Below are positions 14,083-48,420 of a stretch of DNA of 64,000 nt, piece after piece. Position 1 is the stretch's first letter. The number at the start of each line of letters is the position of its first letter. The stretch is taken from the IMG/VR virus record IMGVR_UViG_3300023199_000204, positions 248,001 through 312,000 of that record. One strand, 5' to 3'. Under the pieces are notes generated by a model. The model was given only the letters and a program-made list of their open reading frames with translations, was not told the DNA's origin and did not search any database. Both the position numbers and the translations under genes were made by a program.

Positions 14083-14084
14083 TA

Positions 14085-27241: not shown

Positions 27242-28844
27242 GTAATTAAATGAAGAAAGCTTCAGGATTATATGATGTTAATACAATTATTAATATATCA
27301 TCAGAAAATTTAATGAATGACGGATTTGAAGAGTGGGTGCCCTCTCGCCCAATTGGAACATTTGGTTTCTTGTCGAGATGTAAAAAAGCTTGGATGGTTT
27401 TTACAGGGAAGGCAGATGCTCTTATATGGCCTAAAGGACAGTGATGAGAAAGATTAATAAAGTTTGCGGTAGCATTTTAAAACAGTTAGAAATACCAGAT
27501 AATCTTGAATATTGTTGTGAATTTATAGAGCAACAACTTAATTATGATTGTAAGCAGCACGGTTCGGGATGTCCAGATATAGGAATTAGATTAACAAAGA
27601 ATATTGAATTAATGCTTATAGCACCAAATGCTGAGTATATATGTAATTATTGTCCAAGTTGTGGAAAAAAATGGTCTAAGGAGAGATAATGTTTTATGAT
27701 TTTAGGCAGAATAATTCTGGAGGTTCTTTTAAAGTAACTGATAGTGTTGGACATTATGTAATAATAGAAGCTGATAATGCTCAAGAAGCTAACGAAAAAG
27801 CAGAGCAAGTGGGCATATATTTTGATGGTTGTTCAACTGGAAAAGATTGTAATTGTTGTGGAGACAGATGGTATCCACAATGGGATTCCGATGGTAGTGA
27901 AGAACCATCCATTTATGGAGAAAATATAGAAGAATATAAGAATTCAATAAGATATTCTGTTTCAGATGAAGAAGTAATTTTTGTTTACTATAAAGGCGGA
28001 CACTCTAAAAAAATAGTCATTGATGTTAAATCAGAAAAATAAAAGACCGAAAAGGCTTTAAGAGATGAGGCAGATAAAACTTGGGCAGCTTTTGCTGGGA
28101 TAAGCTATTGTTATAAAAATCCTGAAAGAATGTATCAAGCTGATTTTTACGATAAATATTATGATGAGTCAGGCAATAGAAGTATTGAGAAAAAAGGACT
28201 TGTAGTTAATAATGATTATAATTATCTCACATTTTCTTCTGATAATAAAGAAGAAGTGGAAGATTTTATAAAAGGGTATAGAACATATGCTGAGGCAGTT
28301 AGAGAGGCTATAATTAATTTATCAGATTTGAACAGAGATGAGTTCAGTAGCAAGGGAGAGAAAGCTTTAAAGGATATGCTTTTGAATGCACTGAAAAATG
28401 TAATGTCGACATATTCATAATATAAAAACTAAGAGCTGGTATGAAAAGATACAATATAAAAAAACAATTAGCTTACTATGAAATTTCATTTTTAAACAAC
28501 AAGAATCTTAATGATTTGATAAATGAATTCAATTCATTAAAAAAGAAGTTCGGAAGAAAATGGAATCTTTCAATCAAGTTGGAAGACTCTTATGATAGTT
28601 ATGAGTCCGAGCCTTCATATAATAGCTTTTGCGTTTATGGTGAAAGATTAGAAACTATAAAAGAAGCAAAGAAGAGAATTAAAGAGGAAGAGGAATATAA
28701 AGCTTTAAGAAAAGAGCAAGCAAGGGCTCGGGCAAAGGAAAGAATAAAGGCTGAAAAGGAAACTTATTTAAGACTTAGGAAAAAATTTGAAAAAAAAAAT
28801 CTTAATTTATATTAATAATAATATATTAGGACAGGAATATAATT

Positions 28845-28931
28845 ATGTCTATATTTAATTTACGCTTGAAATTAAAATCTATCCAAATTACTGATCAAGT
28901 TGATCAGAAGGATAGATGTGTGCGCCAATAT
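28845..28931 (+). CDS. leader peptide 2 (MSIFNLRLKLKSIQITDQVDQKDRCVRQ)
   Basis: 28-codon ORF after TATATTAGGACAGGA; shares MxxFNLxL start with leader 1. Confidence 0.65.
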
Positions 28932-28950
28932 AATACCACAAATATTGGAG

Positions 28951-29029
28951 GCTCAAGCGTATAAGACATTAATATTATTAGATGTTTTATCAAGCCGCTT
29001 GGGTCAAAAGCCCTGGCGGCTTTTTTATT
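28951..29029 (+). terminator. attenuator 2: intrinsic terminator 28992-29026 with competing antiterminator 28951-28960/28996-29005
   Basis: AAGCCGC...GCGGCTT plus T run; GGCTCAAGCG pairs over 10 bp with CGCTTGGGTC. Confidence 0.78.
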
Positions 29030-29101
29030 GACGTGCTCCTTGGGACTGAGGGTTAGGCTCTGCAAAAGCTTGAATTTGGGGTTCAACTCCCCAGCACGTC
29101 T
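29030..29101 (+). tRNA. tRNA-Cys(GCA)
   Basis: GACGTGC/GCACGTC, AGGCT-CTGCAAA-AGCTT. Confidence 0.88.
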
Positions 29102-29115
29102 TGGAAATAAAATAA

Positions 29116-29248
29116 GGATGCGTTGAGCAGTGCGGTGAGCTTGGCGGGCTGTGGGGATTGATTAAATGGTAATTTTAATGAGTTCGATTCTCACATTCCC
29201 AAAACCCCGTGGTCTTCGGGCTTGTAGGTTCGATTCCTACCGCATCCA
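29116..29248 (+). tRNA. tRNA-Tyr(GUA) interrupted in the anticodon by a ~50-nt tRNA-like insert
   Basis: GGATGCG/CGCATCC-A, long variable arm with TTCG loop; removing 29153-29202 gives GCGGG-CTGTAAC-CCCGT. Confidence 0.75.
29153..29202 (+). ncRNA. nested minimal tRNA-like element (acceptor + one hairpin + T arm, no anticodon arm)
   Basis: (T)GGGGAT/ATTCCC(A); ATTAA..TTAAT hairpin; TGAG-TTCGATT-CTCA. Confidence 0.7.
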
Positions 29249-29599
29249 ATAGGAGAAAGAAAATTAATTTAGGAAGCATTTTAGATGACTATAATAAATT
29301 TTATAGTAGGATATTAAGTTATTTTAATATAAATTATTTAAGTGGAGATATATCAGACTCCAGAGAGTATTACTGGTTTAATGATTATGATTCACTTTAT
29401 TTCTTTTCAAAAAAAACCAAAATATAAAACTGTATATGAAAAAGGACCAGAATATAAAAGTACGATAAGTTCTTATCACGGAGTAGGCGTAGTAAATGGT
29501 GGAGATTTGACACTTGTTCAAGTTATTGATGACTGCGGAGGTGGTGATATAGCTATGATTCTCGATAATAAAAAGAAAATAACAGATGAGAAAATTATA

Positions 29600-29985
29600 G
29601 AATTAGTTGAAGAATTTTAGGTAGAGAGGATGATAAAAGGATTTCGTGAATATGGCTACAATACGGAAATAAAAAATATAAAAGAGGTGGTTTTTGAAGA
29701 TTTTAAGGTAAGGGAAGAGGACAGGGAAGGTGTTAATATATTATTTGCTGTATATAGACACCCACCTTATTGAAGGATATGCTCTCGTTTTCTTTGAAAA
29801 AAATGGGAAGTTATATGAGGTTCAAAGCTCTCACTGTTCTTGTAGGGGACTTGAGGAGCAGTGGTCCCCATAAGAAACTAACTATGAGACTGTAAAATTT
29901 AGAATTAAGGGCAATAGCTATTGGGGTTGGGATGAATATTCAAATGATATTCTTAAGATTTTAAAAGAAAGGTTTGGTATTATGA
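29600..29985 (+). pseudogene. disrupted hypothetical ORF (..GKLYEVQSSHCSCRGLEEQWSP*ET..)
   Basis: Frameshift near 29770 and in-frame TAA at 29871; boundaries approximate. Confidence 0.4.
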
Positions 29986-30280: not shown

Positions 30281-30352
30281 TCCGGGTTAGTGAAATGGCA
30301 TCATCGCACGGCTGTTAACCGTGAATTAGAGGTTCGAGTCCTCTACCCGGAG
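30281..30352 (+). tRNA. tRNA-Asn(GUU)
   Basis: TCCGGGT/ACCCGGA, CACGG-CTGTTAA-CCGTG. Confidence 0.92.
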
Positions 30353-31048
30353 ATAAGGAGAAAGGAATGTCTAATAAATAAAAAAGAAGTTCTAGAGGTG
30401 TTAGAAAGGTATGAAGAGATTAAAAGTGAAATTAAAGGAACATTCTTAATTTATGCTAAATATTGTGGTATTTAAGTTTCAGAAATAGTTCATATTGAGG
30501 TAAACGAAAGTGAGGTTGAAGTAGAATACACTGAGCCAGGCGGATGTAGCTGTTGCTATACTAGTAGATACTCTACTTTTCCTATTAGTTATTTATGGGA
30601 AGAGAATTGGATTGAAAAGCTAAAAGCTAAGCATCAAGTGGAATTAGCCGAAAAAATTAAAAAGAAAGAAGAGGAAAAAGAAAGAAGAGAAAGAGAGCAA
30701 CTAGAGCTGGATAAAAAGCTTTATAAAAGATTAAAAGAAAAATTCGGCTAAAATAATCTTAGAGGCAGATTCCACTGGGTGAGTTAATAAGGAAAGTAAA
30801 ATAATGAATTTCGCAAAATGGTTTAGAGAACAGCAAAAAGACGCTAAGGCTGTAATTAATTTAACAAAACTTGATGTCAGAGATGAGCCTTGTCTTACCC
30901 TAAAGGGCAATAATAAATATAAAGTTTTGATAACACAAAATACATTTATTTCGAATGTATGTGGAATTTTCGTTGAAGATGTAAATTATGTATTAATGGA
31001 GGCACAAAATGAAGAAACGAAAACGTAAATAAAAATCAGGCAAACTAT

Positions 31049-31195
31049 GCCTCCGTGGTGTTAATGGCTTAGCACACTGGATTTTGCGAAAGACATTTGG
31101 TATGTAGATGTTAGAGGCAACTCTTTGGTCTAAGTGAGTTCGATTCTCACCTTTCGCGTAATCCATGAAGTGTGGGTTCGAATCCTACCGGGGCT
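31049..31195 (+). tRNA. tRNA-Lys(UUU) interrupted in the anticodon by a 73-nt tRNA-like insert
   Basis: GCCTCCG..GTGT/GCAC D arm; removing 31086-31158 gives CTGGA-TTTTTAA-TCCAT; T arm GTGGG-TTCGAAT-CCTAC; 3' acceptor G-run one base short. Confidence 0.72.
31086..31158 (+). ncRNA. nested tRNA-like element without a canonical anticodon loop
   Basis: Perfect GCGAAAG/CTTTCGC+G, D-like ATTT/AGAT, perfect GTGAG-TTCGATT-CTCAC. Confidence 0.8.
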
Positions 31196-32114
31196 ATAAA
31201 ATAGATTAGATAAGAGGATTTAGTTAATATTTATTATTAAAAGGAAAGGAAAAAATGAAAAGTAAAATTTTATCAGTTGTATTGTCAGTTTGTTTGTTAA
31301 TTGGAACGGTATTTGCGACTTCTGCCTGTGGAGACGACTTAGTTGTTAATGGAAAAAACATATAAAACCAAAGGTATTTTTACTCAAGATGAAAAAGACC
31401 CTTGTATTAAATATAGTTTAATTGCTGGAAATGTTGCTTGGGCAATTATATTTTTTGGAACAGCAGTTGCTCCAGTTTATTTTTTTGGATTTTCTTTATG
31501 GGAGCCAGCGAGAGTTAAGTCAGAATGCGAAAAGAAATAAAGTCTCCAAAAATAGGAATGGGAGCAACCATTCAACTTTGGTCAGATAGAATTGCTGGAA
31601 CAATCGTGAGAATTACAAAAACTAAAAAGACAATCTTTATTCAAGAAGATGCGGCATCAAGAATTGATAGAAACGGAATAAGTGAAAGCCAAAGATATGA
31701 ATATACTCCAAATTCTAAAGGAAATGTATATCGTGCTTCTTTAAGAAAATATGGAAGGTTTAGAGTATCAAAAACCAATGAATTAGTTAGTATTAGAGTA
31801 AGACGCAAGTTTTACGATTATTTTTTTTAAGGACATTATGGGAAGATTAAAAGTAGCTAGTTATATTGAAGAGTGGTTGAAATTAGAATGCCCACACTGT
31901 GAAGAGTCAAATTGGCTTCAATCATCATTTGGAGACATATTAGACCCTGATGTTGATGCGATTAGATGCCTATCCTGTAAAGAGTTGTTTCTTGTTTGTG
32001 AAAGAGAGGAATGGGAGAGTGAAGATAATTTATACATAGAAGATGGAGTGACTGATCCGTCTGAAATAAAAGAGTTAGATTTTTATAATGAAGAGATTTG
32101 GAATGATTAAATAA

Positions 32115-32187
32115 GGGTTTGTGGTGTCAATGTAGCATATTCGCCTCTTAAGCGAAAAGGTGATGGGTTCAAGTCCCTCCGAGCCTA
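32115..32187 (+). tRNA. tRNA-Lys(CUU)
   Basis: GGGTTTG/CGAGCCT, TTCGC-CTCTTAA-GCGAA. Confidence 0.85.
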
Positions 32188-32859
32188 CAATAATTGAAAG
32201 GAGAAAAATGAAAGATTTGAAAGACTATTCAATCGAAGATTTACAAAAAGAAATTAATAGAAGGGAAAAGTTAAGTAGTGTTCCAGAATTGATTGAAAAT
32301 CCTGATTTTTCCAATGCGATAAGGGAAGCAGAAGAAATCATCAACTCAGTGTTGGTAAATGATGGGCGTCCTGGGAAGGATTATAAAAATGGTATTTTCT
32401 CAGAAATAATGAAGGCATTATATGGACCAAGCTTTTTTTTGAATGGTGGAACAGTAATGTGAGGCATTAATGTTTGGAGTTAAAAGTGTTTCAGCATTAG
32501 TTCTTAACGAACTCATCCAAACTCAAGATGAGTATGTAAGAAAAAAAGCTTTGTCAAGGATACACAAAAGCATTAAGAGGCTTAAAAATATATTTGATGA
32601 ACTTGAAGGTATAAAAAACAGAAATGTATTTGATGATCTTTATTTTTCAACATAGGAGGCTATACTTGATAAAGTATTAGATGATAAGTGTATTCCATAT
32701 AAGGTAGCATCATATATTCATACAACATTAACTTCTTATATTAGAAGTAGAAGAAGAGAGATATATCTTAAAAATTATTTTGTTAAGAAGAAAAGGGGTA
32801 GGAAGAGATTAATAAACAAGACCAAAAAACATTTGGAAGAATATGAAAGTTATATAAAT

Positions 32860-32933
32860 TCAGCTGTCTTCTAACTGGATAAGATCCCTGGCTTTGAACT
32901 AGGGCAATGTGGGTTCGAATCCCATTATTCCCG
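32860..32933 (+). pseudogene. tRNA-Gln(UUG) body with non-complementary acceptor strands
   Basis: Good D, anticodon (CCTGG-CTTTGAA-CTAGG) and T arms, but TCAGCTG vs TATTCCC. Confidence 0.6.
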
Positions 32934-33005
32934 TCACAGGAAGCTCAAAGTCGCGAGCAGCTCACTTACGGGCGAGGTTGATGGTTTAGCGCCCATCCCT
33001 GTCAC
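32934..33005 (+). pseudogene. degenerate tRNA (Val UAC-like)
   Basis: TCACAGG/CCTGTCA, GCTC/GAGC D stem, broken anticodon stem and T loop. Confidence 0.45.
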
Positions 33006-33008
33006 TCT

Positions 33009-33092
33009 GCCCCTATGACGGAATTGGTGAGACGTGCGCGATTCAAAATCCCGTGCCCTAGAGGTGTGTAGGTTCGAATCCTACTAGGGGTA
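33009..33092 (+). tRNA. tRNA-Leu(CAA)
   Basis: GCCCCTA/TAGGGGT, loop TT-CAA-AA, long variable arm. Confidence 0.85.
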
Positions 33093-34410
33093 TAAAAAAG
33101 AAAGGAGAAAAATGAGACTTACGAAAAAAGATAGATTTATAGTTTCCTGCGAAAATCCCTGTTTTGAGTTCTCAGACACAGAGATAAAAGAATCATATGA
33201 AAAAGCCAAAGGACATTATTGGAGGGATGATGAACAAGAAGAGTATGTTTCTGTTTGTCCAGTTGGGAGGGCAGAAAAATTTGAGTATTTCTCATCATCT
33301 GATGAATTAAATGACTTAAAGTTTAGAAAGCAAGTAAGAAAAGCAGCCTCTTTATGGTCAATGGGAGAATATAATAAAGCTAATAAAATATTTGAAACTT
33401 CATTTAATTTACATTACAACAGTGAGTAAAAACATTATGAAGTTGTTAATAGAGACCTTGCTGATGCTATGATATAAAATGGTTTGGAAATAATATTGTT
33501 AGAATATTTGGTGCCCAGAACAGAAAGGATTTATTTATAATGAGAATGAAAAAGAGAGACGCATATAGAAGGCATATTGAAAAAATGATTAATTAAATTG
33601 AAAATAAATCTCACGGCTTAAAAGATGTAAATTATGGGAATAGATTATTTATGGAAATAGATGGACGTTTCATTATTGCTTGGATCAATAAATTTTACGA
33701 CATTAAAGGAAATAATGGTAAAGAAGACTAGCGAAGGAATGTTATAAATTAAAGAGAGGAAAAAATGAGTGTATGGCATAGAGCTTATTTATATTTAGGA
33801 TGGCATTTAAATTATAAGGAAGAATATGAACTTGTTAAATATTTAAGAAAAAGATCTTATGAACTTTATGATAATCAGGAAGAAGTTAAATTAGACTGTG
33901 TTGATGATTGTATGTGTGCTCGCTATTTTGTTATAGGTAAAAAAATACAAATGGTCGCTAGTGAAGATGAGAACAAGTTTTTTAATGTCGAATTACCTAA
34001 AGAAAAAGACTATAGTGAAGTGGTAGAGATATTAAAAGAAAAATATGAAGTAGATTTAGGAAGACCGGAATTATTTATGTTTTCTCACGGAGATTAAAAT
34101 GACTAGTAAAGAAAGTAAAAATCCTAAACCTAAAGCTAAAGCTAAAATTATTGCTTATTATGATTGGTATAAGGTAGCAGAATATATTTGTGATAAATAT
34201 GAGGACGTTAGTTATGATGATTTAGAGAATTATAGAATTGAACTTCACGATATTAATTCGGCCGGAAATGGCGTAATGGCTAAGGTAGATGATTATTATT
34301 TTAAATTTGAAGAAAATGAAAATAATCGCAGAGTTATTAAACATATACTTGATGAATTTAGTAAAGAAGAAAATAGAAAAGTTATGGTTAAAATAGAATG
34401 GTAGAACAAA

Positions 34411-34483
34411 CGGTCCATAGTTTAATTGGTTAAAACAAGGTCCTGATAAGACTTAGCCGAAAGTTCGAATCTTTCTGGACCGA
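34411..34483 (+). tRNA. tRNA-Ile(GAU)
   Basis: CGGTCCA/TGGACCG, AGGTC-CTGATAA-GACTT. Confidence 0.9.
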
Positions 34484-34914
34484 TAGGAGAGTATATGGTT
34501 TTAAGAAAATATGTTGTAGTAAGTGAAATGCTTACAAGAACGGAATGGGTAGAGTATCCCGTAGCGGGCTATGAAGAATGTTATCATATCTATAATGTTG
34601 TTGAGGCAGAAAGTCACGCAAAAGCAAAATGGAAAGTTTGGAAAAACTCTGATGATTATAAAAAATATGGTGGATATGATATAAGAGATATGCCGAAATT
34701 TTCTATAAAATTATATAAAGAAGAGTTTAATGATTAAATAATCAAGAAATGGTTCTGATTTGAAAGTTGAACTGAAGGCTGATTGAAAGGATTAAATAAC
34801 ATCGCATTGGGCTGACCAAAAAACGCAGCTGGGTTAAAGCTCCCGGCAGGTTTAATCTAAGTAGATGTTAGTATGAAAGATTAGTAGATGTTCCGAGTAT
34901 TGATTATTAAAGAC

Positions 34915-35001
34915 ATTCCGATAGTTTAATGGCAAAAACGCCCGCACCCAGCACAATGCGATTTGAAGCGGGAGATGTTGGTTCGAGTCCGACAGAGTTT
35001 G
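34915..35001 (+). pseudogene. tRNA pseudogene with a 22-nt anticodon loop
   Basis: D arm, CCCGC/GCGGG stem and T arm intact; acceptor unpaired; 15 extra loop nt. Confidence 0.55.
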
Positions 35002-35005
35002 TTGA

Positions 35006-35078
35006 ACACTGATAGCATAACGGTTAATGCCCTCGCCTGATGAGTGAGCGAATGTAGGTTCAAATCCTACTCAGTGTA
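35006..35078 (+). tRNA. tRNA-Ile(GAU), second copy, G37
   Basis: ACACTGA/TCAGTGT, CTCGC-CTGATGA-GTGAG. Confidence 0.85.
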
Positions 35079-36475
35079 TAATAAAGAGAGGTTGTAATAA
35101 TAATATTTAAAGCGGTAGTTAACGCAACTAAACAGGTTGAAGACATTTGGAAATGTAAAGTTATAAAAACTTTTATTGTCCAAAAAGGAGATATATTTGT
35201 TATTTATAGTGAAACCGATGATGGAATTACGATGATGAATTATAGCTCCGTTTATAATGGAGAAATTACAAATGACATCTGTTTTAATTAGTGATCTAGA
35301 ATATTTTAATATAAATGATTCTAAAAAATCAATAGAAATTTTAAAAAGAAATAATATTCCAAAGTTAAAAGAAAGTGATATAAAGTTCGATTTCAGTGTA
35401 GGACATAGAGATGGTCCAGCAACAGGCATCTGCTCTGCTAATGGAAAAAAATGTTGGTTCGAAAGAGTAAACGAAGGCTATGTTAAATACAATGATGGTG
35501 AATTCATATTAAGATTATATGTTATTGTTCCAATTTCAGATAAAGAATATCAAAAAGAATTGGAAATTCATAATATTTTTAAGAAGAACGTAGGAAAGCA
35601 CACAACTTATAAGTCAGACGGGAAAACACGATACAAAGTAGATGGCATTTTAGTTTCGTTAATAAAAACTTTGCTTGGAAGAAAAAGAAGTAAATATTAT
35701 AATAATCCAGAGGTTAGGAAGTTTCAGCAAGAAGTAAATTATGACCATCGAGCAATAATTGGTTGGTGGATTGAAGAGGTCCCGTATTATAGGTGGTTAA
35801 AATGATTTTTAAAAAAAATTGAAACTAAAAAAAAGCGAAAGAAAATATATTTAATATTTTAAAAAGTTATAATGAAAAGCTCTGGAAGAACTATGATTAT
35901 GATATATCAGTTAATAAGGATAAAAAAGAAATAAGAATAATAGTTAGTTGTATATATAGATTAGGAAATTTTGTATCTTTTGAGCTACTTTCGAGATTTT
36001 CAGATATGTTTAATACCAAGAAAATTAAACTAATTGATGCGAATTATACATTAGGATGTGAAAGTTGTGATTATGGGTCAAGTGATGAAATAACTATTTT
36101 AATAGAGGGAGCAGAAGTTTAAATGAAATACATAATATTAATAATTTTAGCTTTATTGATTGCTGATGCTGGAACGTATTATTTAAGTACGGAAAGAAAA
36201 CAAGTGAGCCTTTCTTATATTAGCATTTATAAACTTTATTCTAAAATTAGAAACATAAATCCCAGTAAATGGAAAGAAGAGAAGTTTCTAGAATACAGCG
36301 TAAGTATCAAGTCTCATACAATAAGGTTAGGAAAATATAAATTATATTTTGATGGTTCAATAATAAGGACCAGTTTGCTTCAAACATTTATGTTTGGCTC
36401 CTTATATAATGATATTGAAGATCATTACAATCCTGGAAAAATAAATGTTAAAAAATCAATGAAAAAAGTTCTGGA

Positions 36476-37119: not shown

Positions 37120-37191
37120 TCTCCTGTAGCTCAGAGGTAGAGCGGTCGCCTGTTAAGTGAATGGTCGCAAGTTCGAATCTTGCCGGGAGAG
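37120..37191 (+). tRNA. tRNA-Asn(GUU), second copy
   Basis: TCTCCTG/CGGGAGA, loop CT-GTT-AA. Confidence 0.82.
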
Positions 37192-37600
37192 CTTAAATGA
37201 AAGGAGAAATAAAACGTATAAAGTAGATAGTTTTAAAATTACGGTTAATACAAAAAAAGCTATTGAGTTCATTGGAGAAAAACAGAGAAGAACATTTAAA
37301 AGAGTATCAGGAGCTTCAAGAACTTTTTCTTAAAAAAGTTTTATCTGAGTTTAAAAAGAGGAGTAAGATAATCTTAAAAACAACGCCACAGAGCATTAAT
37401 AATGATGAGTTGTTAAGATTTAATAATATAATTATTCCTAGGTCTTATATAAAAGAATATGATGACGTAATATCTATGCTTGAATTTACTTTACAAGAAT
37501 CAGTGGAAATAACTGGTGAGCAATATAAATCTTGGATAAAGAATGAATGGAATTGGATGAGCACTTTTAAGAATACTTTGGAAAGTTATAAGGCAGTAAG

Positions 37601-38020
37601 ATGAAAACTAATGTTAATCTATATATTAAGTGTATGAGAACTGGAAAAGTTCTGGGCGTGACAAAAGGTGTTGGAACAAATAATTGGAATTTACCTGGCG
37701 GAAAGCTTGAAGAAAACGAAGACTTTATAAGTGGAGCTTTTAGAGAAGTTAAAGAAGAAACGGGAGTTGATTTTAACCGACCAAGCGTAGGTTATACTTG
37801 GGATCCCATTCCTTTTATATCTCTTTGTAAGGCTCAGGATGATGGTGATGTTGAGTATGTTTTAGTATTTTGGGGGATACTATGTGATTCGAAATTCTTT
37901 GAGCCGATGTCCTCATCAGAGGGCGATGCTGCTTGAATTGATAAAGAACTACTGCTTGATGGTAGGTTTAAAGAAGTAAATAAACTTGTTATTGAACATT
38001 TTAAAGGATTTGTAAGTTAA
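37601..38020 (+). CDS. Nudix hydrolase with in-frame TGA at 37934
   Basis: Nudix box GGKLEENEDFISGAFREVKEETG; frame stays open after the TGA (EGDAA*IDKELL...) to TAA 38020. Confidence 0.75.
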
Positions 38021-38439
38021 TGAATAATCCATATAAGAGTGAACTTGAGGCGGCACATAATAGAATTCAAGCTCTTGAAAAAGAGCTTAATTTTAAAAAA
38101 AATAAAGCCCCTTTAAAAACAAAGAAAAAGATAACAATGAGCAAGAAAACAATTTCCTTTCTAAAAAGAAACTACAAGATTATGATTTTTTGTTTTGCCG
38201 CACTATCTGTTTTTTTATGTTTTACTTTTGGAAATTCCAGAGCAAAAATTGAAAGTTGTTATACAAACCTTACGCATGAAAGTTGCTCAAAAATATGTGA
38301 AAGGAATGGGAAAACAAAATTAATCGGCGGAGAGTGGACGATAAAAAATCTTTCGGCAAACTGTTTTTGTTATTATGAAGACGGATCTTTTAAGAAAAAA
38401 AAAATAACTTGGATTAATAAAAAACTATGTAATAAATAA

Positions 38440-38514
38440 GCTAGTGTAGCTTAGTTTGGCAAAAGCACCTCGGTGGTATTGAGGAAATTAGGAGTTCGAG
38501 TCTCCTCGCTAGCT
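38440..38514 (+). tRNA. tRNA-Thr(GGU) with atypical loop GT-GGT-AT
   Basis: GCTAGTG/CGCTAGC, CCTCG/TGAGG stem. Confidence 0.75.
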
Positions 38515-38551
38515 CTAGCTAATTCATAATTTTAAAAGGAAGGAAGATAAT

Positions 38552-38995
38552 ATGAAGTGTATAAAACACCCTCATTATACTGTATCTAGAAAGCCGACAT
38601 CTGGGTGTGAAGATTGTTTAAGAATTTTTATACAAACAAAAACCGCATTTAAAAATGACGTTAATTCCCTTTTAGACAAAATAGATTTGTCTAACACAGA
38701 AACAGCTAAATGCTTAGATGTTTCGCCTCAAACTTTGAAAAGATGGAAAGAAGGAAAAAGCATGCCTTCAGAAAGATTTAGAGATGATATTCTTTTTTAT
38801 TTAGAACGAGTGTCCCAAGGGAATTATAACAAAACTTTAAAAGAGCATTTGGCTAAAATCGAAGAAGATAAAAAAGCTGAAGAAGATAAAGTTAAAAGAA
38901 AAGAAATGATAAACTATTTTTCTGTTTGGAAAGAGGGAGAGCTTGTTTCAAAAGACGATCTTATTGAGAACCTTTTAGAAGAAAGAATAGATTAA
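38552..38995 (+). CDS. Cro/C1-type HTH protein with N-terminal Cys/His cluster
   Basis: LSNTETAKCLDVSPQTLKRWKEGKSMP. Confidence 0.7.
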   Translation: MKCIKHPHYTVSRKPTSGCEDCLRIFIQTKTAFKNDVNSLLDKIDLSNTETAKCLDVSPQTLKRWKEGKSMPSERFRDDILFYLERVSQGNYNKTLKEHLAKIEEDKKAEEDKVKRKEMINYFSVWKEGELVSKDDLIENLLEERID

Positions 38996-39033
38996 AGGAG
39001 ATATTAATGTGGAAACTTATTGTAAGATGGGGA

Positions 39034-39068
39034 ACTTCTTCTAGTTAAGTTATTTAACTAGAGGAGGT
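39034..39068 (+). promoter_or_regulatory. 15-bp hairpin that sequesters the GAGGAGG RBS of the next ORF
   Basis: ACTTCTTCTAGTTAA-GTTAT-TTAACTAGAGGAGGT; GTG start at 39074. Confidence 0.55.
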
Positions 39069-39703
39069 TTCAAGTGTATGAGATTAAAAAATCTGGAAAG
39101 TTTTATGTTCTTGATCGTAATAATAAACACACTGAGTTTATAAGTTATGAAGAACTACTTAAATGGTTAAGGAGGTTTAAACTACATTGTTTTCATTTAC
39201 CTAACTTTTTCCGTAAGAATGGTATTGGAAAAATTGATCGCGTTGGTAATAATTGGAATAATATTTGTATATTGCCTCAAAGAAAAGGAACTGGATGGAA
39301 AAAGTATAGTTTTTTTACAGAGAGGCACCCCCGTTGATTATATTGTTTTTGACGAATATTATCGGGTAATTAATACTGATGTCTTAATAAAAGATTTAGA
39401 AAATCTACCCGAGCCTAAATATTATTATAGAAAATGGAAATTTAAAAATAATAAAAATTGGCCAGGTTTTAGAAATGGTCCAGTTCCTTATACTGGGGTT
39501 AAAAGATTTAGATTTAGCTCTTATTATAAAAGTCCTAGAACTACATCAGAAAGAAGATATGTATATGCTCATCCTGAATATGTAAGACCAAAAAGAGGGA
39601 TTAGAGCATTACCAAATGACTGGGATGACATACCAAAAGGGCGTCGCTCTCGTGGGTGGAAAGAACAGTCTAAAAAGAAAAGGCAGTGGATGAAATAATC
39701 ATC

Positions 39704-39776
39704 GCCCCTATGGTGTAACTGGATAGCATCTATCGCTACGAACGATAAGGTTTGGGTTCGAGTCCTAATAGGGGTT
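39704..39776 (+). tRNA. tRNA-Arg(ACG)
   Basis: GCCCCTA/TAGGGGT, TATCG-CTACGAA-CGATA. Confidence 0.9.
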
Positions 39777-40634
39777 TTTTAAAAGGAGAAAGATATGAAA
39801 AAGTATATTCTTGGAGAAATGTGGCTTGATGAAAATCTTGGTATAAGATATATTTAGGAACCGTTTAACTCTACTTATCTAGAAGTTATTACAATAAGTA
39901 AAAAAGGAAAAGCCAAGGTTAGAAAGATAGTTCCTGATATGGCTTTAATATTACAAAATTTTGTTTCTCAAGCGAATGAGTTATTAAGAAAACATCAACT
40001 TTTTGAAAAGTCTTGTGAAGCTTTAGATGAAATAAAAGGTTTAAGACACCCTAAAAATGAAGAAGAAATAACTGAAGAACAACTGAAGTTTATAAAGTTA
40101 ATGACTGGTTCAGAGCTACCAGAGGCTGATTTATAATGCCAACTAAAGGAATGTATCAGGTGTGGTGGTGTGGCAGAGGGGAAGAATATTTTGATAGAGA
40201 GTTCAATAATTTTGAATCTGCCATACAATACATAAGATCAGAATGGGGCTATGGGGCTATCCACAGAAACTAATTCTGCCAGATGGGACTAATTATTCTT
40301 TTGACGAACCAGAATTTAATAATTATGTCGTTTTAAGTCTCTTTTCTTTAAAAGATGAAATATTAATTAATCCCAATACTAGGCAAGTTTATGTAATTAA
40401 TATAATTAATAAAGATAAAAGAGTATGGAAATATTTAAGAAACGCTAATAGAATTACTAATATTAGAGAGCGTATGGATGACTATATGAAAAATGTTAAT
40501 GCTAATGAAATTGTTGATCTTCTTTTAGATTATGATATGTTAGAACCAATTAGTTGTGGAATATCTTCTGGCGTAGAGGATATGAGGTTTACCCAAAGTG
40601 GAAGAAGAAAGAGAGGAGATTAAAAATAAATAAC

Positions 40635-40717
40635 GCATCCCGTTCCAGACGCCTGTCTTCTAAATAGGTTCCTTAATAGTTTGGGGGAGGTAAGAGGTTC
40701 GAGTCCTCCGGGGTGTT
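40635..40717 (+). tRNA. atypical tRNA-Arg(UCU): no D arm, long variable arm, 8/4 fold
   Basis: GCATCCCG/CGGGGTGT, CCTGT-CTTCTAA-ATAGG, 8-bp V stem, GAGG-TTCGAGT-CCTC. Confidence 0.62.
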
Positions 40718-42241
40718 TAAAAAAGAGAAAGATATGTCAATGAGAATTAAGCAACATAAGTTATTCATAGAGACTAAAAAAAAGAATTGAGGCTGGCTAC
40801 GATCTTCAAACAGAGGCAATGGTTTTGTCGGATAGGCTTATGGATATTGGAGATCCAGACAGAAGGGGAGAGTTTATAAAACACTCCATAATTATAGAAA
40901 CCTCTAATTCAAAACCTAGATTAAGAAAGTTAAAAAGAAAGGGAGAACAAATTTGGAAAACAAATGCTAAAAAGTGGTTTAATCTTCCTTTGAAAATAGA
41001 TTCTAATAAAGTAAAAGCACAAGGAAAGGTTTATACTAGTATAGATTGTCTTTTAATGTATGAATATGAAGTTGGAAAATCTGGAGTTCCGTTTTACCCA
41101 AATAAAGGCGATCCAGATAAACATTTAATGTTTATTGCTAATCAGAGATCTAATTGGAGAGCTTTAACTAATACTAGTAATTACTATACCTCCTTTCACG
41201 AAGAGTATATTTATATATTTATGAAAAGTGGTTTGGTAAATAAAATAATCTATACTCCTAAATTAAAAAAAACGGTAAATAAAATTCTAATAAAAGAGCC
41301 ACTATATACAGAAGAAAGGAAAATTTACATTAAAGATAATGGGCATTAATTATGTCACCAAATCCAGAAGTATATAAAAAATTTGAAGTTTTAAGGCATT
41401 ACGAAGACTTTATCGTTTCCCTCTTATATATTAAGAGGGATATTAGGAATGGGTTTAATTTAGGTAGAAAGAAAGAAGTAAAAAAAAGAAATAATTGTTT
41501 TAAATAAAAAGGATTTTTTTATATAAAAAGAAAATGTTCTGGAAGGAATTATTTTCAAAAATTGATAGTTATAATATTCCTTATAAAGACAGAAAAGAGA
41601 TTATAAAAAGAATAAGACAAGAAAGGTATTATCTTAAACTACCCCGTCCTGAAAATTGGGAACAGAGATATGGAAAAATAATAAGTTGGTGGGCAAAATG
41701 GGTAATAAGAAAAAAAATATAGATGATCCTTGTGTAAGCAACTACCGACTTGCGAGAGTTAATGATAAACACTGGGTTAAAAGATATTATTTACAACAGG
41801 ATAGGAGCTGTTGTGGAGTCTTTGATGTTAGGAAAATAGGACCAGATTTGCGTGTATATCTTATTGGATGTAATTATGGGCACTAATGGAGTAGGTAATG
41901 AATATAGAAGATTTAATAAAATTAATTGGGAAAGCATATGATTCATATTTTAACTTAGTTGTTAATTAATCTCAAGATAAATATTTGGCAAAAAGTTATT
42001 GTGAATGTTTCATTCTGCAAAATATAGATTAAAAATATATTTTGCCAAAAAAAGTATTCTTTGTTTTATAAAGAAGCGAGAAGAGGAGAGAAAATAAAAT
42101 GTTTATCAGAGTTGGATTCTTGCTTATATTCAGTTTTAAAATGCTTTAGAAAGTCAAGTGAAGAGGCATTTAAAATTATAAAATTGATTAAGAAATATTA
42201 TGAAAAGTTATATAAACATAAATTAAATTATAAAGGAGAGA

Positions 42242-43239
42242 ATGTTAGTGTCTAAAATATTACTAAAGTTTATAGATCTATTTTGTGGAATCGGAGCATT
42301 TCATCAAGCAATTATTAATCTCAAGAATAAATCTATAATTAAAGATTATAAATGCATTCTATCTTGTGATATAGATAAAGATGCAAAGGAAACTTATCAA
42401 AAAAACTTTGATACAGATTTATTTATAAATGATGTTAAAGATGTATCAGACATTAATAATACTTATAGCTTATTATGTGCAGGATTTCCTTGTCAACCGT
42501 TTAGTATTTCAGGAAATAAACGGGGTTTTAATGATGAGAGAGCAGGTCTATTTTTTAAAGTTGTTGATATTGTAAAAAAAACTAATCCTAATTTTATAAT
42601 AATAGAAAACTCGCCTCGTTTAATTAGGAATAGTAGTTATTTCTCAGTCATACAAAATGAATTAGATAATGCTGGATATAATGTTAATGCTGAGATTATT
42701 AATTCTAATAAATTCGCAACTCCTAAAAAAAAGAATCAAAGGTTATATAGTTGCTATCAATAAAAATATTAATATTAATTATATATTTTCCTAAAGGGGA
42801 GGAACATAATTTATCAGTCCATGATATATTAGATTCTTCAGTTCAGAAACACTTAATCGAAAAAAGATATGAAATAATATGGAATAAAACTGTTAATGAA
42901 AACAAAAAATACGGACCTATTAGAATAGGATATGTTTTAAAGAGAAGACAAGGAGAACGCATTTATAGTGTTGACGGGCATTCAATAACCTTAACTGCTT
43001 CGGGAGGAGGCCCTGGTAGAAGTACTGGATTATATTGTGTAGATAAAAGTAAAAACATTATTAGAAGATTATCAGTTAATGAATGTAGGAAATTATCAGG
43101 CTTTAATAATGATTTTATTGTTAATAAAAATAAAAGAGTTGCTTATAAACAATTTGGAAATACTATTGTAGTTCCTGTAGTAGAAGCTATTATAAAAAAT
43201 TTAGTTTTACAGACAAAAGAAGAGAATTGGAGTGACTAG
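42242..43239 (+). pseudogene. dcm: C5 cytosine DNA methyltransferase split by frameshift(s)
   Basis: DLFCGIG, AGFPCQPFS and IENS in the first ORF; RRLSVNECRKLSGF and YKQFGNTIVVPVV in the second; break at an A-tract near 42724. Confidence 0.85.
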
Positions 43240-43988
43240 GTCTGGTGCGGTTAAAGGAAATCTCAAAGAGAGAGCAGTATTAACTGTCCTTAAAGAACAC
43301 ATTAAATACACCGAATTTCACTCAATTTTTGGTATTAGAGTTTGTATAAATTGTTACGATAACATCACTTTCTCCCACCTTTCAAGAAAAAAAAACAGAT
43401 TTTATAGTAGTTTTTCCTAAATGTGAGAATTGCATTAGAGAAAAAAATATATTAAATATACAGCATAAATTTGGTGCAGGCAATTCAGTAGCTAGATGTA
43501 AACAAATTAAGTTTTTAACTTTACTTAATTTAGATGACAATAAATCATATATAATTAAAAAGTTTTTTGGTACAAAAAATACAAAAGGAACTGGCATTTC
43601 TGTCACAGAAAGAGAGGTATTTAAGAATAATATTAAAAATAATATACAAGGTGTTATTAAATTTTTTCTTTTTGGAAATGAAGAAGATTATATTCCTAAT
43701 ATTTTGTTAAAGCAAAATAAAAATAAGATTGATGTTTATTATAATTACAATATTATATTGAATAATATTAACAGCACTGCTTTTGATATTAATATCAAAA
43801 CCAATACTATAAATATTTCAATTAACAGATTTAAAGCATTATCTTTTCAAAGAAAAGGCGGGGGAAAGAAGGAGAAAAATCCGCAAGATATTCAATGCAA
43901 AATACTTAAAAGTTTTTATGATTTATTAAATGAATTAACATATAAAAATACTGTTAATTTAAATGAATTGTCTTTTAAAGTATTTTAA
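43232..43988 (+). pseudogene. fragmented ORF downstream of the MTase, possibly a decayed partner endonuclease
   Basis: Several short consecutive frames over extremely AT-rich sequence; position only. Confidence 0.3.
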
Positions 43989-43994
43989 TTACAC

Positions 43995-44036
43995 ATACGT
44001 GCGTGAAATTTAATTTCATCGTCTCGACGATTTTAG
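43995..44036. repeat. degenerate intergenic repeat copy 2
   Basis: ATACGTGCGTGAAATTTAATTTCATCGTCTCGACGATTTTA; see 6835. Confidence 0.55.
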
Positions 44037-44500
44037 GGAGAGAAGGAATGGCGAGATTTAAATCAGCTTATGGAGAGTTAAAACTTACTTGGAACTGTAG
44101 AAAGTGTAAAATAACTCATACAACAGATGATTTATTTATAGAGTGTAAGCGAGAATCATATGCTTTAAATGAAGACCAAAGGGAGCATCATTTTTTAATG
44201 TTGTGTTCAAAATGTAATAAATTTTATAATGTAGAGGTTATTTAATGGATGAAAATAAATTAAATTTAATGAAGCGAATTAAATATTCAATAAGCAAAAC
44301 TTGTTCTATGTGTAAATGGGCAACATTTTAAAACCATAAAGAATTTGGAAGTTGTTATAAACAAAGTTATAGGCATAAAAAACATAATGATATTCTTAGT
44401 ATGACCATTCATAAGAGTGGAATATGTGATAAATTTGAGTTTTCACATAAGGATTTTTATAAACTTGGAGATTACATTCCTTTTTTGAAAGGAGCGATTA

Positions 44501-44944
44501 ATGAACCCACAAGCTATTAGATTATATCACGTTGGCTACCATAACAAACCAGGACAGATATACAGGTTTTATACTATAAGGCTAAAATGGGATGATGGTG
44601 GGAGAATGGATTTTCCAAGTGAGGAGCACGCAAATGCTTACTTAGAAGGAAGACCAGCAAATTTTGTAAGTAATATTAAATTATCATCAAAAGTCCCTGT
44701 TAAAAAGGAAGAGGTTATTGCTGAAGCAACAGAATTTAATGTTATGTTAAATTCCTATGGAGTAAATAAAGTTCCTGTAATCAAGGTTGTGAGAGAAATA
44801 ACTTCTCTTGGTCTCAGAGATGCGAAGAATCTCGTTGAGTCTGCCCCTGTTGCGATACAGGAGGGTTTAGAGAAAGAGCAAGCCGAAAAGACAGCAAGGA
44901 AGTTAAAAGAGCTTGGAGCGGAAGTGGAAGTGGTTTCAGCTTAA
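44501..44944 (+). CDS. ribosomal protein bL12 C-terminal domain fused to an unrelated N-terminal domain
   Basis: [44 protein letters not shown]. Confidence 0.88.
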
Positions 44945-44949
44945 AAATA

Positions 44950-44969
44950 TAGCACCTAATGGTGCTATA
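44950..44969 (+). terminator. hairpin TATAGCACC-TAAT-GGTGCTATA
   Basis: Perfect 9-bp stem between the bL12-domain gene and tRNA-Val; no T-tail, may be a processing signal. Confidence 0.35.
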
Positions 44970-45040
44970 GATGAGTAACTCAGTGGAAGAGTGGGTGTTT
45001 TACGAGCACTTGGTCGGGGGTTCAAATCCCTCCTCATCCA
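44969..45040 (+). tRNA. tRNA-Val(UAC)
   Basis: AGATGAG/CTCATCC (1:72 mismatch), GGTGT-TTTACGA-GCACT. Confidence 0.8.
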
Positions 45041-45859: not shown

Positions 45860-46076
45860 ACTCTTGTTAGATTTGAATATCTTGATATAGATGAATATGC
45901 TTATTTTTTAATTCCCGGATGGGATAGAAACATTCAGCTTTCTATTTCATTAAAGGAACTTCCATTTGAATTATCCAGAGAATTAGTGGAATAATTAAAT
46001 GAGGGCAATCCTTATAGGTGTTTCGTTGAAACAAATATTGGTGCCGAGTCAAAGTTTAAATTGAGATTCCAAAATT

Positions 46077-48419: not shown

Positions 48420-48420
48420 G

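What the first reader, a model, noticed from the sequence alone, without database searches (positions are those of the whole stretch)
28810..45040. Second leader-peptide attenuator, matched to a different tRNA set (operon 2)
Seen: a 28-codon ORF (28845-28931) that begins MxxFNLxL like leader 1. It is followed by a 10-bp antiterminator option (28951-60 with 28996-29005) that excludes a strong terminator (28992-29026) ending 3 nt before tRNA-Cys. Of the 12 anticodons between 29.0 and 45.0 kb (Cys, Tyr, Asn, Lys UUU/CUU, Gln, Leu CAA, Ile, Thr GGU, Arg ACG/UCU, Val UAC), 11 have a matching codon in this leader (TGT, AAT, AAA, AAG, CAA, TTG, ATC/ATT, ACT, CGC, AGA, GTG). Tyr is the exception. The leader has no His, Gly, Glu or Ala codon, and only 1 of the 11 operon-1 anticodons matches it. 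Leader 1 matches 5 of these 12, so the partition is asymmetric. The Pro and Trp tRNAs lie upstream of both leaders, and neither leader uses Pro or Trp codons. Three GAT (Asp) codons have no intact Asp tRNA here. Inference: two independently tuned tRNA-sensing modules. The spacing from stop codon to antiterminator (20 nt) differs from element 1, so the switching geometry is uncertain.
Basis: partly seen in the sequence, partly recalled or inferred. Interest (0 to 1): 0.88.

Follow-up and report, generated by a model that had tools for sequence, protein, structure and literature searches.

The report
Codon-matched attenuator before phage tRNA genes
A giant phage puts a short translated leader and a switchable transcription stop just in front of a block of its own tRNA genes, written largely in the codons those tRNAs read, so it may make more tRNA only when decoding runs slow.

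Summary
The element is real, but several details were wrong.

**What is there**
- The leader ORF has 39 codons (28845-28964), not 28.
- Its true stop touches the 5' arm of the antiterminator. This is the classical attenuator geometry, the same as at leader 1.
- The RNA has all four trp-type segments: 1:2 (28861-69 with 28953-61), 2:3 (28950-59 with 28996-29005) and the terminator 28992-29022.
- tRNA-Cys starts 3 nt after the U-tract, so it can only be made by read-through.

**tRNA set**
- Tyr, Gln and Arg-UCU are insert-bearing or decayed tRNA-like genes. Lys-UUU was not found.

**Codon match**
- The match survives null models. Leader 2 covers 8/8 detected anticodons (P about 0.001-0.03).
- It ranks first of 180 small ORFs for its own tRNA set. 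Leader 1 does the same for its set (11/11, P about 1e-4).

**Limits**
- No relative carrying this element was found in any collection, so there is no conservation evidence.

**Verdict**
- Most likely this is a ribosome-mediated attenuator that senses decoding capacity and gates the tRNA block (confidence 0.55).
- It is a new variant of a known mechanism.

The parts
28822..28836 (+). Shared upstream 10-mer TATATTAGGA (28822-31) plus a second AGGA(A) at 28832-36, 9 nt before the ATG: ribosome-binding region of leader 2
   Evidence: Read. The exact 10-mer occurs on the + strand only here and at 13972, before leader 1.
28845..28964 (+). Leader ORF 2: 39 codons plus TAA (not 28 codons)
   Evidence: Translation. 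Called as a 39-aa gene in the source records. N-terminus M-x-x-F-N-L-x-L is shared with leader 1.
28861..28869 (+). Region 1 (codons 6-9): nine Watson-Crick pairs with region 2 (28953-61), the anti-antiterminator
   Evidence: MFE and centroid of 28845-29029 (z = -6.9). Best duplex -13.5 kcal/mol; shuffles reach it with P = 0.018.
28877..28948 (+). Two hairpins inside the coding region (28877-28917 and 28925-28948): possible pause structures. They cover the codons whose stalling frees region 2.
28950..28961 (+). Region 2: pairs either with region 1 or with region 3. It ends at the stop codon (28962-64), so a terminating ribosome covers it.
   Evidence: coordinates read.
28962..28989 (+). Spacer hairpin in the loop of the antiterminator
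28992..29029 (+). Intrinsic terminator. Stem 28992-29004 / 29010-29022 (-19.6 kcal/mol), then a T-run to 29026 followed by ATT. Region 3 (28996-29005) is its 5' arm.
   Evidence: One of three strong + strand terminator-like hairpins in the window.
29030..29101 (+). tRNA-Cys (GCA), starting 3 nt after the U-tract. There is no room for a promoter of its own after the terminator.
   Evidence: ARAGORN. Not found by the Rfam tRNA model.
29116..29248 (+). Type-II tRNA-like gene with a 50-nt insert in the anticodon loop. It would be Tyr GUA only if the insert were excised exactly.
30281..45041 (+). Detected tRNAs of the block: Asn GUU 30281-30352 and 37120-37192; Lys CUU 32115-32188; Leu CAA 33008-33093; Ile GAU 34411-34483 and 35006-35078; Thr GGU 38440-38515; Arg ACG 39704-39776; Val UAC 44968-45041. 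They are interspersed with + strand ORFs.
46076..53616 (+). Further tRNAs before the next strong terminator-like hairpin (53913-53961): Ser CGA, Val GAC, Met CAU, Thr UGU. Probably part of the same unit.
13972..14143 (+). Paralogous module 1: the 10-mer, leader ORF 13987-14082 (31 codons), region 2 14084-93, region 3 14111-20, and terminator 14108-14135 with its T-run. It is followed by a 153-aa ORF (14159-14620) and then 12 tRNA genes with 11 anticodons.

Best explanation
Leader 2 is a ribosome-mediated (leader-peptide) transcription attenuator of the trp/his/thr type. It stands in front of a block of phage tRNA genes and small ORFs.

PROPOSED MECHANISM
- Transcripts arriving from upstream carry a 39-codon ORF.
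- If the ORF is not translated, region 1 pairs with region 2, the 3:4 terminator forms and transcription stops 3 nt before tRNA-Cys.
- If the ribosome runs smoothly to the stop codon, it sits on region 2. The terminator forms again.
- If the ribosome stalls inside the ORF because a needed charged tRNA is short, region 2 is free. It pairs with region 3 as soon as region 3 emerges, the terminator cannot form, and RNA polymerase reads into the tRNA block.
- In an equilibrium model this works best for stalls at codons 23-31.
- The ORF is written largely in codons read by the tRNAs encoded downstream, so the element would act as a feedback sensor of decoding capacity for that tRNA set.
- Leader 1 would do the same for a different, almost non-overlapping set.

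SHOWN
- The ORF, its ribosome-binding site, the three alternative pairings, the position of the stop codon, and the terminator abutting the tRNA.
- A codon match beyond chance.

INFERRED
- That the ORF is translated, that the terminator is conditional, and that stalling is the signal.
For: 1. ORF. A 39-codon ATG ORF with AGGA 9 nt upstream, also called by the source's gene caller.
2. Structure. The region 28845-29029 folds far better than shuffles (-60.1 kcal/mol, z = -6.9, 0 of 200 shuffles). The fold shows 1:2 plus the terminator.
3. Switch. Without the 3' arm, the minimum-energy fold switches to 2:3. For 28930-29035 the MFE (-28.5) uses the antiterminator and the centroid (-25.3) uses the terminator.
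4. Stop codon. The stop at 28962-64 touches region 2 (28950-61). In leader 1 the stop (14080-82) lies 2 nt before region 2 (14084-93). The geometry is the same.
5. Read-through is required. tRNA-Cys starts 3 nt after the T-run, and in module 1 the next ribosome-binding site follows within about 15 nt. Downstream genes must therefore be expressed by read-through.
6. Terminators are rare. Only three strong + strand terminator-like hairpins exist in 64 kb, and two follow the two M-x-x-F-N-L-x-L ORFs.
7. Codon match, leader 2.
   - It covers 8/8 detected downstream anticodons: P = 0.005 (codon-usage null), 0.004 (9019 real gene windows), 0.027 (same-composition shuffles).
   - It covers 11/12 up to the next terminator: P = 0.002 and 0.026.
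   - For sensor codons 2-31, coverage P = 0.001 and own-minus-other P = 0.0015.
8. Codon match, leader 1. It covers 11/11 of its set: P about 1e-4 to 4e-4, and 0 of 9547 gene windows reach that.
9. Cross-matches are at or below expectation (Fisher P = 0.005).
10. Rank. Among all 180 ATG ORFs of 25-45 codons on both strands, each leader ranks first for its own downstream set.
11. The operon-1-type codons of leader 2 (GGA GGC TCA AGC) lie in the last five codons. These are region 2, where stalling could not antiterminate.
12. Ribosome-occlusion partition functions. Terminator probability falls from 0.95 to about 0.3 for stalls at codons 23-31, if the 5' side is blocked.
13. The two leaders are alike only in the ribosome-binding site and the first 8 codons. 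That fits a regulatory module better than a protein family.
Against: - No relative carries the element, so there is no conservation or covariation evidence. The neighbouring proteins are orphans, and two DNA-pattern scans of IMG/VR and one of the metagenome collection returned only chance hits.
- The other contigs that carry it are essentially identical to the window over the overlap: two at 100%, one with a single gap in 8 kb.
- The leader-2 codon match is only moderate under the strictest null (P 0.03-0.1 for the fraction of matched codons).
- 15 of its 39 codons have no detected phage tRNA in the window: GAT x3, AAA x2, CAA x3, CAG, TTA x2, TTT, ATA, AGA, TAT.
- Regulatory codons are scattered singly rather than in the tandem runs typical of classical attenuators.
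- The antiterminator alone is weakly significant: P = 0.03-0.08 for leader 2 and 0.15 for leader 1.
- The leader-1 1:2 pairing is not beyond chance (P = 0.5).
- At equilibrium, stalling barely opens the leader-1 terminator. For leader 2 it works only if RNA behind the ribosome is blocked.
- tRNA-Cys is not recognised by the Rfam model.
- The host, the RNA polymerase used and the promoters are all unknown. The promoter scan was uninformative.
- One attenuator would have to govern 16-25 kb that also holds unrelated genes (methylase, NUDIX, GIY-YIG).
Confidence: 0.55

Rival explanations
1. An ordinary, constitutively leaky intrinsic terminator that merely sets a fixed expression step between gene blocks of a long + strand array. 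The small ORF in front of it is incidental or unrelated, and the codon match is chance helped by flexible definitions.
For: - Terminators inside phage transcription units that pass a fixed fraction of polymerases are common (general knowledge).
- The antiterminator is only weakly beyond chance.
- The leader-2 match drops to P 0.03-0.1 under same-composition shuffles.
- 15 of 39 codons have no phage tRNA.
- There is no conservation evidence.
Against: - Both terminators are preceded by small ORFs that share the ribosome-binding 10-mer and the first 8 residues.
- Each ORF is rank 1 of 180 small ORFs for its own downstream tRNA set.
- The stop codons sit on region 2 in both modules.
- A 9-bp Watson-Crick 1:2 pairing is present, and the fold has z = -6.9.
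Confidence: 0.2
2. A structured non-coding RNA that is not read by ribosomes. It could be a 5' leader that guides processing or stabilises the upstream mRNA after RNase P cuts at tRNA-Cys. It could also be a switch that binds a protein or a tRNA directly, like a T-box.
For: - Very strong folding signal (z = -6.9).
- The element directly abuts a tRNA 5' end, where RNase P would cut.
- The phage encodes many translation and RNA-repair factors that could bind RNA.
Against: - No Rfam family, T-box included, matches 28800-29030, even at E up to 1.
- An open 39-codon frame with ATG and AGGA in a 30% G+C genome is unlikely by chance. By a rough estimate of my own from base composition, about 4% of frames stay open that long; this was not computed with a tool.
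- The codon match is specific to this reading frame. The other five frames cover 4-6 of 8 anticodons against 8 of 8.
- A stabilising hairpin needs no U-tract.
Confidence: 0.1
3. Two paralogous micropeptide genes with a function of their own (for example small regulators), each ending its transcription unit with a terminator.
For: - Shared N-terminal motif and shared upstream 10-mer.
- The gene caller predicted the ORF.
Against: - Similarity stops after residue 8, and the rest of the two peptides has unrelated composition.
- No homologue turned up in the DNA-pattern scans of the two contig collections.
- The terminators are followed immediately by genes that need read-through.
Confidence: 0.08

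Closest known systems
Leader-peptide transcription attenuators of amino-acid biosynthesis operons (trpL, hisL, thrL, ilvL/ivbL, leuL, pheL of enterobacteria)
   Same: - A short translated ORF, four RNA segments with mutually exclusive 1:2, 2:3 and 3:4 pairings, and an intrinsic terminator with a U-tract.
- The stop codon is placed so that a terminating ribosome covers segment 2.
- Multivalent sensing of several amino acids is known for thr and ilv (general knowledge; pheL leaders are described in PMC3082878).
   Different: - The regulated genes are tRNA genes plus small phage ORFs, not biosynthetic enzymes.
- The leader samples 8-12 different codon types, mostly once to four times each, rather than runs of one to three amino acids.
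- Region 1 lies upstream of most of the sensing codons.
- It is encoded by a phage.
- There is no sequence similarity to any known leader.
pheM leader controlling pheST (phenylalanyl-tRNA synthetase) in E. coli
   Same: Leader-peptide attenuation applied to a component of the translation apparatus rather than to biosynthesis (general knowledge).
   Different: It has one amino acid (Phe) and regulates a synthetase. Here many codons are sampled and the tRNAs themselves would be regulated.
T-box riboswitches
   Same: A terminator/antiterminator switch that reports tRNA charging status to genes of the translation supply chain.
   Different: - A T-box binds uncharged tRNA directly, has a specifier loop and a conserved T-box sequence, and needs no translation.
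- No T-box match was found here, and the signal here is reading-frame specific.
Phage tRNA clusters, for example T4 and T5-like phages and the jumbo phage XacN1
   Same: tRNA genes sit in arrays interspersed with small ORFs. They are thought to sustain translation late in infection or to replace host tRNAs cut by defence nucleases (PMC10264068, PMC11464382, PMC11555353, PMC5852040).
   Different: The library searches found no report of a leader-peptide attenuator, or any decoding-sensing switch, in front of such arrays.

Membership tests
Leader-peptide (ribosome-mediated) transcription attenuator | Short ORF with start codon and ribosome-binding site upstream of the regulated genes | tested here: met
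   ATG at 28845 with AGGA 9 nt upstream; 39 codons. Called by the source's gene caller.
Leader-peptide (ribosome-mediated) transcription attenuator | Intrinsic terminator (G+C-rich hairpin plus U-tract) between the leader ORF and the first regulated gene | tested here: met
   Hairpin 28992-29022 at -19.6 kcal/mol, T-run to 29026, tRNA-Cys at 29030.
Leader-peptide (ribosome-mediated) transcription attenuator | Antiterminator pairing that uses the 5' arm of the terminator | tested here: met
   28950-59 pairs with 28996-29005: 10 bp, duplex -16.9 kcal/mol. Beyond shuffles only at P = 0.03-0.08.
Leader-peptide (ribosome-mediated) transcription attenuator | Anti-antiterminator (1:2) pairing that involves the leader coding region | tested here: met
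   28861-69 pairs with 28953-61: 9 Watson-Crick pairs, P = 0.018. For leader 1 the equivalent pairing is not beyond chance.
Leader-peptide (ribosome-mediated) transcription attenuator | Stop codon placed so that a terminating ribosome occludes segment 2 | tested here: met
   TAA at 28962-64 directly follows segment 2 (28950-61). In leader 1, TAA at 14080-82 lies 2 nt before segment 2.
Leader-peptide (ribosome-mediated) transcription attenuator | Leader enriched in codons whose decoding reports the regulated pathway (classically tandem runs) | tested here: inconclusive
   Enriched for codons read by the downstream tRNAs: 8/8 anticodons, P 0.001-0.03, rank 1 of 180. The codons are scattered rather than in runs, and 15 of 39 codons have no detected phage tRNA.
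Leader-peptide (ribosome-mediated) transcription attenuator | Read-through responds to translation of the leader and to supply of charged tRNA | not testable with these tools
   Needs reporter, in-vitro or infection transcript data. Only an equilibrium occlusion model was run.
Leader-peptide (ribosome-mediated) transcription attenuator | Conservation of the ORF and compensatory changes in the pairings among relatives | tested here: inconclusive
   No relatives carrying the element were found. The only comparison is with the paralogous leader 1. It keeps the layout with a different sequence in segments 2, 3 and 4, though its 1:2 pairing is not beyond chance.
T-box riboswitch | Match to the T-box covariance model (Stem I specifier, conserved T-box sequence) | tested here: not met
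   No Rfam hit in 28800-29030 at the gathering score or at E up to 1.

The most novel reading that the evidence does not exclude
The phage carries a decoding-capacity homeostat made of two attenuators in series. Each has a leader that works as a codon checklist for the tRNA genes behind it. A shortage of any listed tRNA would then switch on transcription of exactly the block that supplies it. Such a shortage could come from codon-usage mismatch, host shut-off, or tRNA-cleaving host defences. This would be the first attenuator known to control tRNA genes, and a sensing arm for phage counter-defence by tRNA replacement.
Probability: 0.4. Interest if true: 0.9.

Novelty: new variant of a known kind. 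Interest (0 to 1): 0.75.

Why it matters
- **An open question.** Phage tRNA genes are now seen as tools that keep translation going when host tRNAs are degraded or cut by defence nucleases (PMC10264068, PMC11464382, PMC11555353). How phages control these genes is essentially unknown.
- **What would be new.** A leader-peptide attenuator written in the codons of the downstream tRNAs would be a direct feedback loop from decoding speed to tRNA synthesis. Textbook attenuation does not cover this logic, and the literature searches found no report of it.
- **It is easy to test.** A 200-nt fragment in a reporter or a defined in-vitro translation system is enough.
- **Wider use.** It would give a compact, programmable codon-specific sensor. 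It would also offer a way to predict which tRNAs matter to a phage.

Tried and rejected
**1. Comparative evidence**
- The proteins flanking both leaders (124 aa and 153 aa) have no homologues in 5.8 billion proteins.
- The 153-aa protein has one 34% relative, in a higher-G+C 318-kb phage with no tRNAs or leader nearby.
- The 362-aa protein turned out to be a PHO4-type permease shared with bacteria, so it says nothing about phage kinship. Its two IMG/VR relatives have a different layout and no attenuator-like element.
- The RNA ligase and the L7/L12-like protein found only the source contig.
- Leader DNA patterns gave only chance hits in IMG/VR and in the metagenome collection.
- GenBank phages gave no DNA match.
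- The other contigs carrying the element are essentially identical to the window over the overlap: two at 100%, one with a single gap in 8 kb.

**2. Known RNA families.** No Rfam family, T-box included, covers the element.

**3. Promoters.** The sigma-70 consensus scan was no better than shuffles (112 found against 96 expected). Whether each module has its own promoter stays open.

**4. Missing tRNAs.**
- Lys UUU and Asp tRNAs were searched for with relaxed ARAGORN, Rfam at E up to 1, a T-loop scan and an anticodon-arm scan. None was found.
- ARAGORN also found none in the 9-10 kb before the window or in a contig reaching about 2 kb past its end.

**5. A third leader.** The third terminator-like hairpin (53913-53961) has no comparable leader. 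It overlaps the start of a small hydrophobic ORF.

**6. Leader 1 as a structural control.** Its 1:2 pairing and its equilibrium switching are not beyond chance. The RNA-switch argument therefore rests mainly on leader 2, and the codon argument mainly on leader 1.

Full report
**Source and setting**

The window is bases 248001-312000 of a 316-kb, 30% G+C phage contig from a metagenome, IMGVR_UViG_3300023199_000204. Almost all of its ORFs lie on the + strand.

The window is a translation island. It holds 26 tRNA genes by ARAGORN, and one more by Rfam. It also holds:
- a tmRNA;
- an L7/L12-like protein;
- an RNA ligase fused to a tRNA-binding domain;
- an EF-Ts-like protein;
- IF3, peptide deformylase and a chaperonin just upstream of the window.

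**Check of the observation**

The ORF starting at 28845 is real, but it does not end at 28931. Positions 28929-31 read TAT, and the frame stays open to TAA at 28962-64. That gives 39 codons. The source's gene caller made the same call.

The true peptide therefore has one Tyr, two Gly and four Ser codons. It matches 5 of the 11 operon-1 anticodons rather than 1.

It competes with a hairpin at 28992-29022 that is followed by a T-run, and tRNA-Cys begins at 29030.

A scan for hairpins followed by T-runs found only three strong ones on the + strand in 64 kb. They lie at 14108-14135, 28992-29022 and 53913-53961. The first two follow the only two ORFs in the window that begin M-x-x-F-N-L-x-L. Both of these ORFs are preceded by the same exact 10-mer, which occurs nowhere else on the + strand.

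**The tRNA set**

Between 29.0 and 45.0 kb the detected tRNAs are:
- Cys GCA (ARAGORN only; the Rfam model does not find it);
- Asn GUU, two copies;
- Lys CUU (Rfam 41.7 bits; ARAGORN only at a relaxed threshold);
- Leu CAA;
- Ile GAU, two copies;
- Thr GGU, Arg ACG and Val UAC.

That makes eight anticodons.

- 'Tyr' (29116-29248) is a type-II tRNA with a 50-nt insert in its anticodon loop.
- 'Gln' is three non-canonical copies. One carries a 71-nt insert (31050-31196). Two lack an acceptor stem (32865-32933 and 34913-35001).
- 'Arg UCU' (40640-40716) lacks a D arm.
- No Lys UUU gene and no Asp gene was found by any scan.

Four more tRNAs lie before the next strong hairpin at 53.9 kb: Ser CGA, Val GAC, Met CAU and Thr UGU.

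**Is the codon match more than chance?**

I used standard wobble rules and several null models.

| Test for leader 2 | Observed | Null and P |
|---|---|---|
| Detected anticodons, full 39 codons | 8 of 8 | codon-usage 0.005; 9019 real gene windows 0.004; same-composition shuffles 0.027 |
| Anticodons up to the 53.9-kb hairpin | 11 of 12 | codon-usage 0.002; same-composition 0.026 |
| Sensor codons 2-31, coverage | 8 of 8 | codon-usage 0.001 |
| Sensor codons 2-31, own-minus-other matches | 10 | codon-usage 0.0015 |

The fraction of matched codons is weaker, at P 0.01-0.1.

Leader 1 covers 11 of 11 of its downstream anticodons, with 18 of 31 codons matched. P is about 1e-4 to 4e-4, and none of 9547 gene windows reaches that.

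Cross-matches are at or below expectation. The two-by-two partition gives Fisher P = 0.005.

The simplest control is empirical. Among all 180 ATG ORFs of 25-45 codons on both strands of the window, leader 1 is the single best for the operon-1 set. Leader 2 is the single best for the operon-2 set.

The match is also frame-specific. The other five frames of the same DNA cover 4-6 of 8 anticodons.

So the codon match does not vanish under a proper null. It is strong for leader 1 and moderate for leader 2.

Fifteen of the 39 leader-2 codons have no detected phage tRNA. Six of them (CAA x3, CAG, TAT, AGA) would be matched if the insert-bearing or decayed tRNA-like genes were functional.

**RNA architecture**

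With the correct ORF the element has the full four-segment layout of a trp-type attenuator:
- Segment 1 (28861-69, codons 6-9) forms nine Watson-Crick pairs with segment 2 (28953-61).
- Segment 2 (28950-59) can pair instead with segment 3 (28996-29005).
- Segments 3 and 4 form the terminator.

The whole region folds at -60.1 kcal/mol against -34.3 for shuffles (z = -6.9).

Taken one at a time, the pairings are less striking. The 1:2 pairing is reached by shuffles with P = 0.018. Pairing of segment 3 with upstream sequence reaches P = 0.03-0.08.

When the 3' arm of the terminator is withheld, mimicking the nascent transcript, the best fold uses 2:3.

The stop codon directly follows segment 2, so a terminating ribosome would cover it. 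In leader 1 the stop lies 2 nt before segment 2.

Partition functions with a 28-nt ribosome footprint show the terminator probability falling from 0.95 to about 0.3 for stalls at codons 23-31 (D R C V R Q Y N T). This holds only if RNA behind the ribosome cannot pair forward.

The four operon-1-type codons of leader 2 lie in its last five codons. These are segment 2 itself, where a stall could not antiterminate.

Leader 1 is a weaker structural case. It folds with z = -3.3, its 1:2 pairing is not beyond chance, and it shows little equilibrium switching.

**Why the terminator is probably regulatory**

tRNA-Cys starts 3 nt after the T-run. In module 1 the next gene's ribosome-binding site follows within about 15 nt. 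There is no room for a promoter after either terminator, so the genes just downstream can only be expressed by read-through.

That rules out a plain end-of-operon terminator. It does not distinguish a regulated switch from a constitutively leaky one.

**Mechanism proposed**

- No translation: 1:2 and 3:4 form, and transcription stops.
- Smooth translation to the stop: the ribosome covers segment 2, 3:4 forms, and transcription stops.
- A stall within the sensor codons because a charged tRNA is short: segment 2 is free, 2:3 forms, and polymerase reads through into the tRNA block.

Because the sensor codons are those read by the downstream tRNAs, this would be negative feedback on tRNA supply.

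The anatomy and the statistics are shown. Translation of the leader, conditional termination and the stalling signal are inferred.

**Rivals**

- A leaky terminator behind an incidental ORF (0.2).
- A non-coding structured RNA for processing, or for direct binding of a protein or tRNA (0.1). No Rfam family, T-box included, matches.
- Paralogous micropeptide genes (0.08). Similarity ends after residue 8.

**Comparison with known systems**

It works like the leader-peptide attenuators of the trp, his, thr, ilv and pheA operons, and like pheM-pheST. This comparison rests on general knowledge, and on PMC3082878 for pheL.

It meets the five structural features of that class. It was inconclusive on codon enrichment, because the codons are scattered rather than in runs. 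It could not be tested for response or for conservation.

It differs in three ways. It regulates tRNA genes, it samples 8-12 codon types, and it is phage-encoded.

Full-text searches found no report of a leader-peptide attenuator in front of tRNA genes or phage tRNA arrays. Recent work shows that phage tRNAs rescue infection from tRNA-cleaving defences (PMC10264068, PMC11464382, PMC11555353). That gives such a sensor an obvious use.

**Limits**

No relative carrying this element could be found in any collection. The other contigs that carry it are essentially identical to the window over the overlap, two at 100% and one with a single gap in 8 kb. There is therefore no evolutionary test. The host, the polymerase and the promoters are unknown.

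**Verdict**

The best explanation is a codon-matched ribosome-mediated attenuator, at confidence 0.55. It is a new variant of a known kind, with interest 0.75.

Noticed in passing
window 31050-31196 (insert 31086-31158): A Gln(UUG)-like tRNA carries in its anticodon loop a 71-73-nt insert. On its own the insert folds into a cloverleaf with a 7-bp acceptor stem, a D-like arm and a T arm, and a GCAA-capped stem in place of the anticodon loop (-24.1 kcal/mol). It is a tRNA-like structure nested in a tRNA.
   Followed up: partly
window 29116-29248 (insert about 29156-29205): A type-II tRNA (long variable arm, A73) has a 50-nt insert in its anticodon loop. The insert shares the exact 16-mer TGAGTTCGATTCTCAC with the insert at 31135. 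Exact excision would give a Tyr GUA loop. An untested idea: these are tRNA-like introns cut out by RNase P and RNase Z and sealed by the phage RNA ligase. A literature search found nothing similar.
   Followed up: partly
window 32865-32933, 34913-35001, 40640-40716: Decayed or non-canonical tRNA-like genes. Two are Gln(UUG)-like copies with an intact anticodon arm and T arm but no acceptor stem, one of them with a 15-nt loop insert. The third is an Arg(UCU)-like element without a D arm and with a long variable region.
   Followed up: partly
window 32933-33007: A 75-nt element directly abutting tRNA-Leu(CAA) folds into a three-hairpin, cloverleaf-like shape closed by a stem (-22.1 kcal/mol). 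It lacks canonical tRNA loops.
   Followed up: no
window 44501-44944, 62399-62986; L061 7437-8449: The phage encodes several translation factors: a ribosomal protein L7/L12-like protein, an EF-Ts-like protein and, just upstream of the window, IF3 and peptide deformylase. A chaperonin, HSP20 and a PARP-like protein are also there.
   Followed up: partly
window 51907-53214: An RNA ligase (Rnl2-like) fused to an N-terminal tRNA-binding domain lies inside the tRNA block. It is a candidate for tRNA repair or joining.
   Followed up: no
window 25854-26942: This 362-aa ORF is a PHO4-type phosphate/sulfate permease, 50-57% identical to thousands of bacterial proteins (for example from Marivirga and Myxococcota bins). 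It is probably an auxiliary metabolic gene taken from a host.
   Followed up: partly
window 42242-43239: A C5 cytosine DNA methylase is split into two overlapping ORFs. The N-terminal half is 42242-42763 and the C-terminal half is 42751-43239. This is either a frameshift or a split gene.
   Followed up: no
window 5836-6831: An adenylosuccinate-synthetase-like gene best matches the PHROG annotated as a PurZ-type enzyme. This hints at a modified (2-aminoadenine) genome.
   Followed up: no
window 63694-64000 (continues past the window; L063 about 1980-2350): A tmRNA gene is found by Rfam (82 bits, cut by the window end). ARAGORN does not recognise it in the full-length Logan contig.
   Followed up: no
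window 53913-53961: The third strong terminator-like hairpin overlaps the ribosome-binding site and start of a small hydrophobic ORF (ATG at 53930). It has no leader like the other two and may mark the end of the tRNA block.
   Followed up: partly
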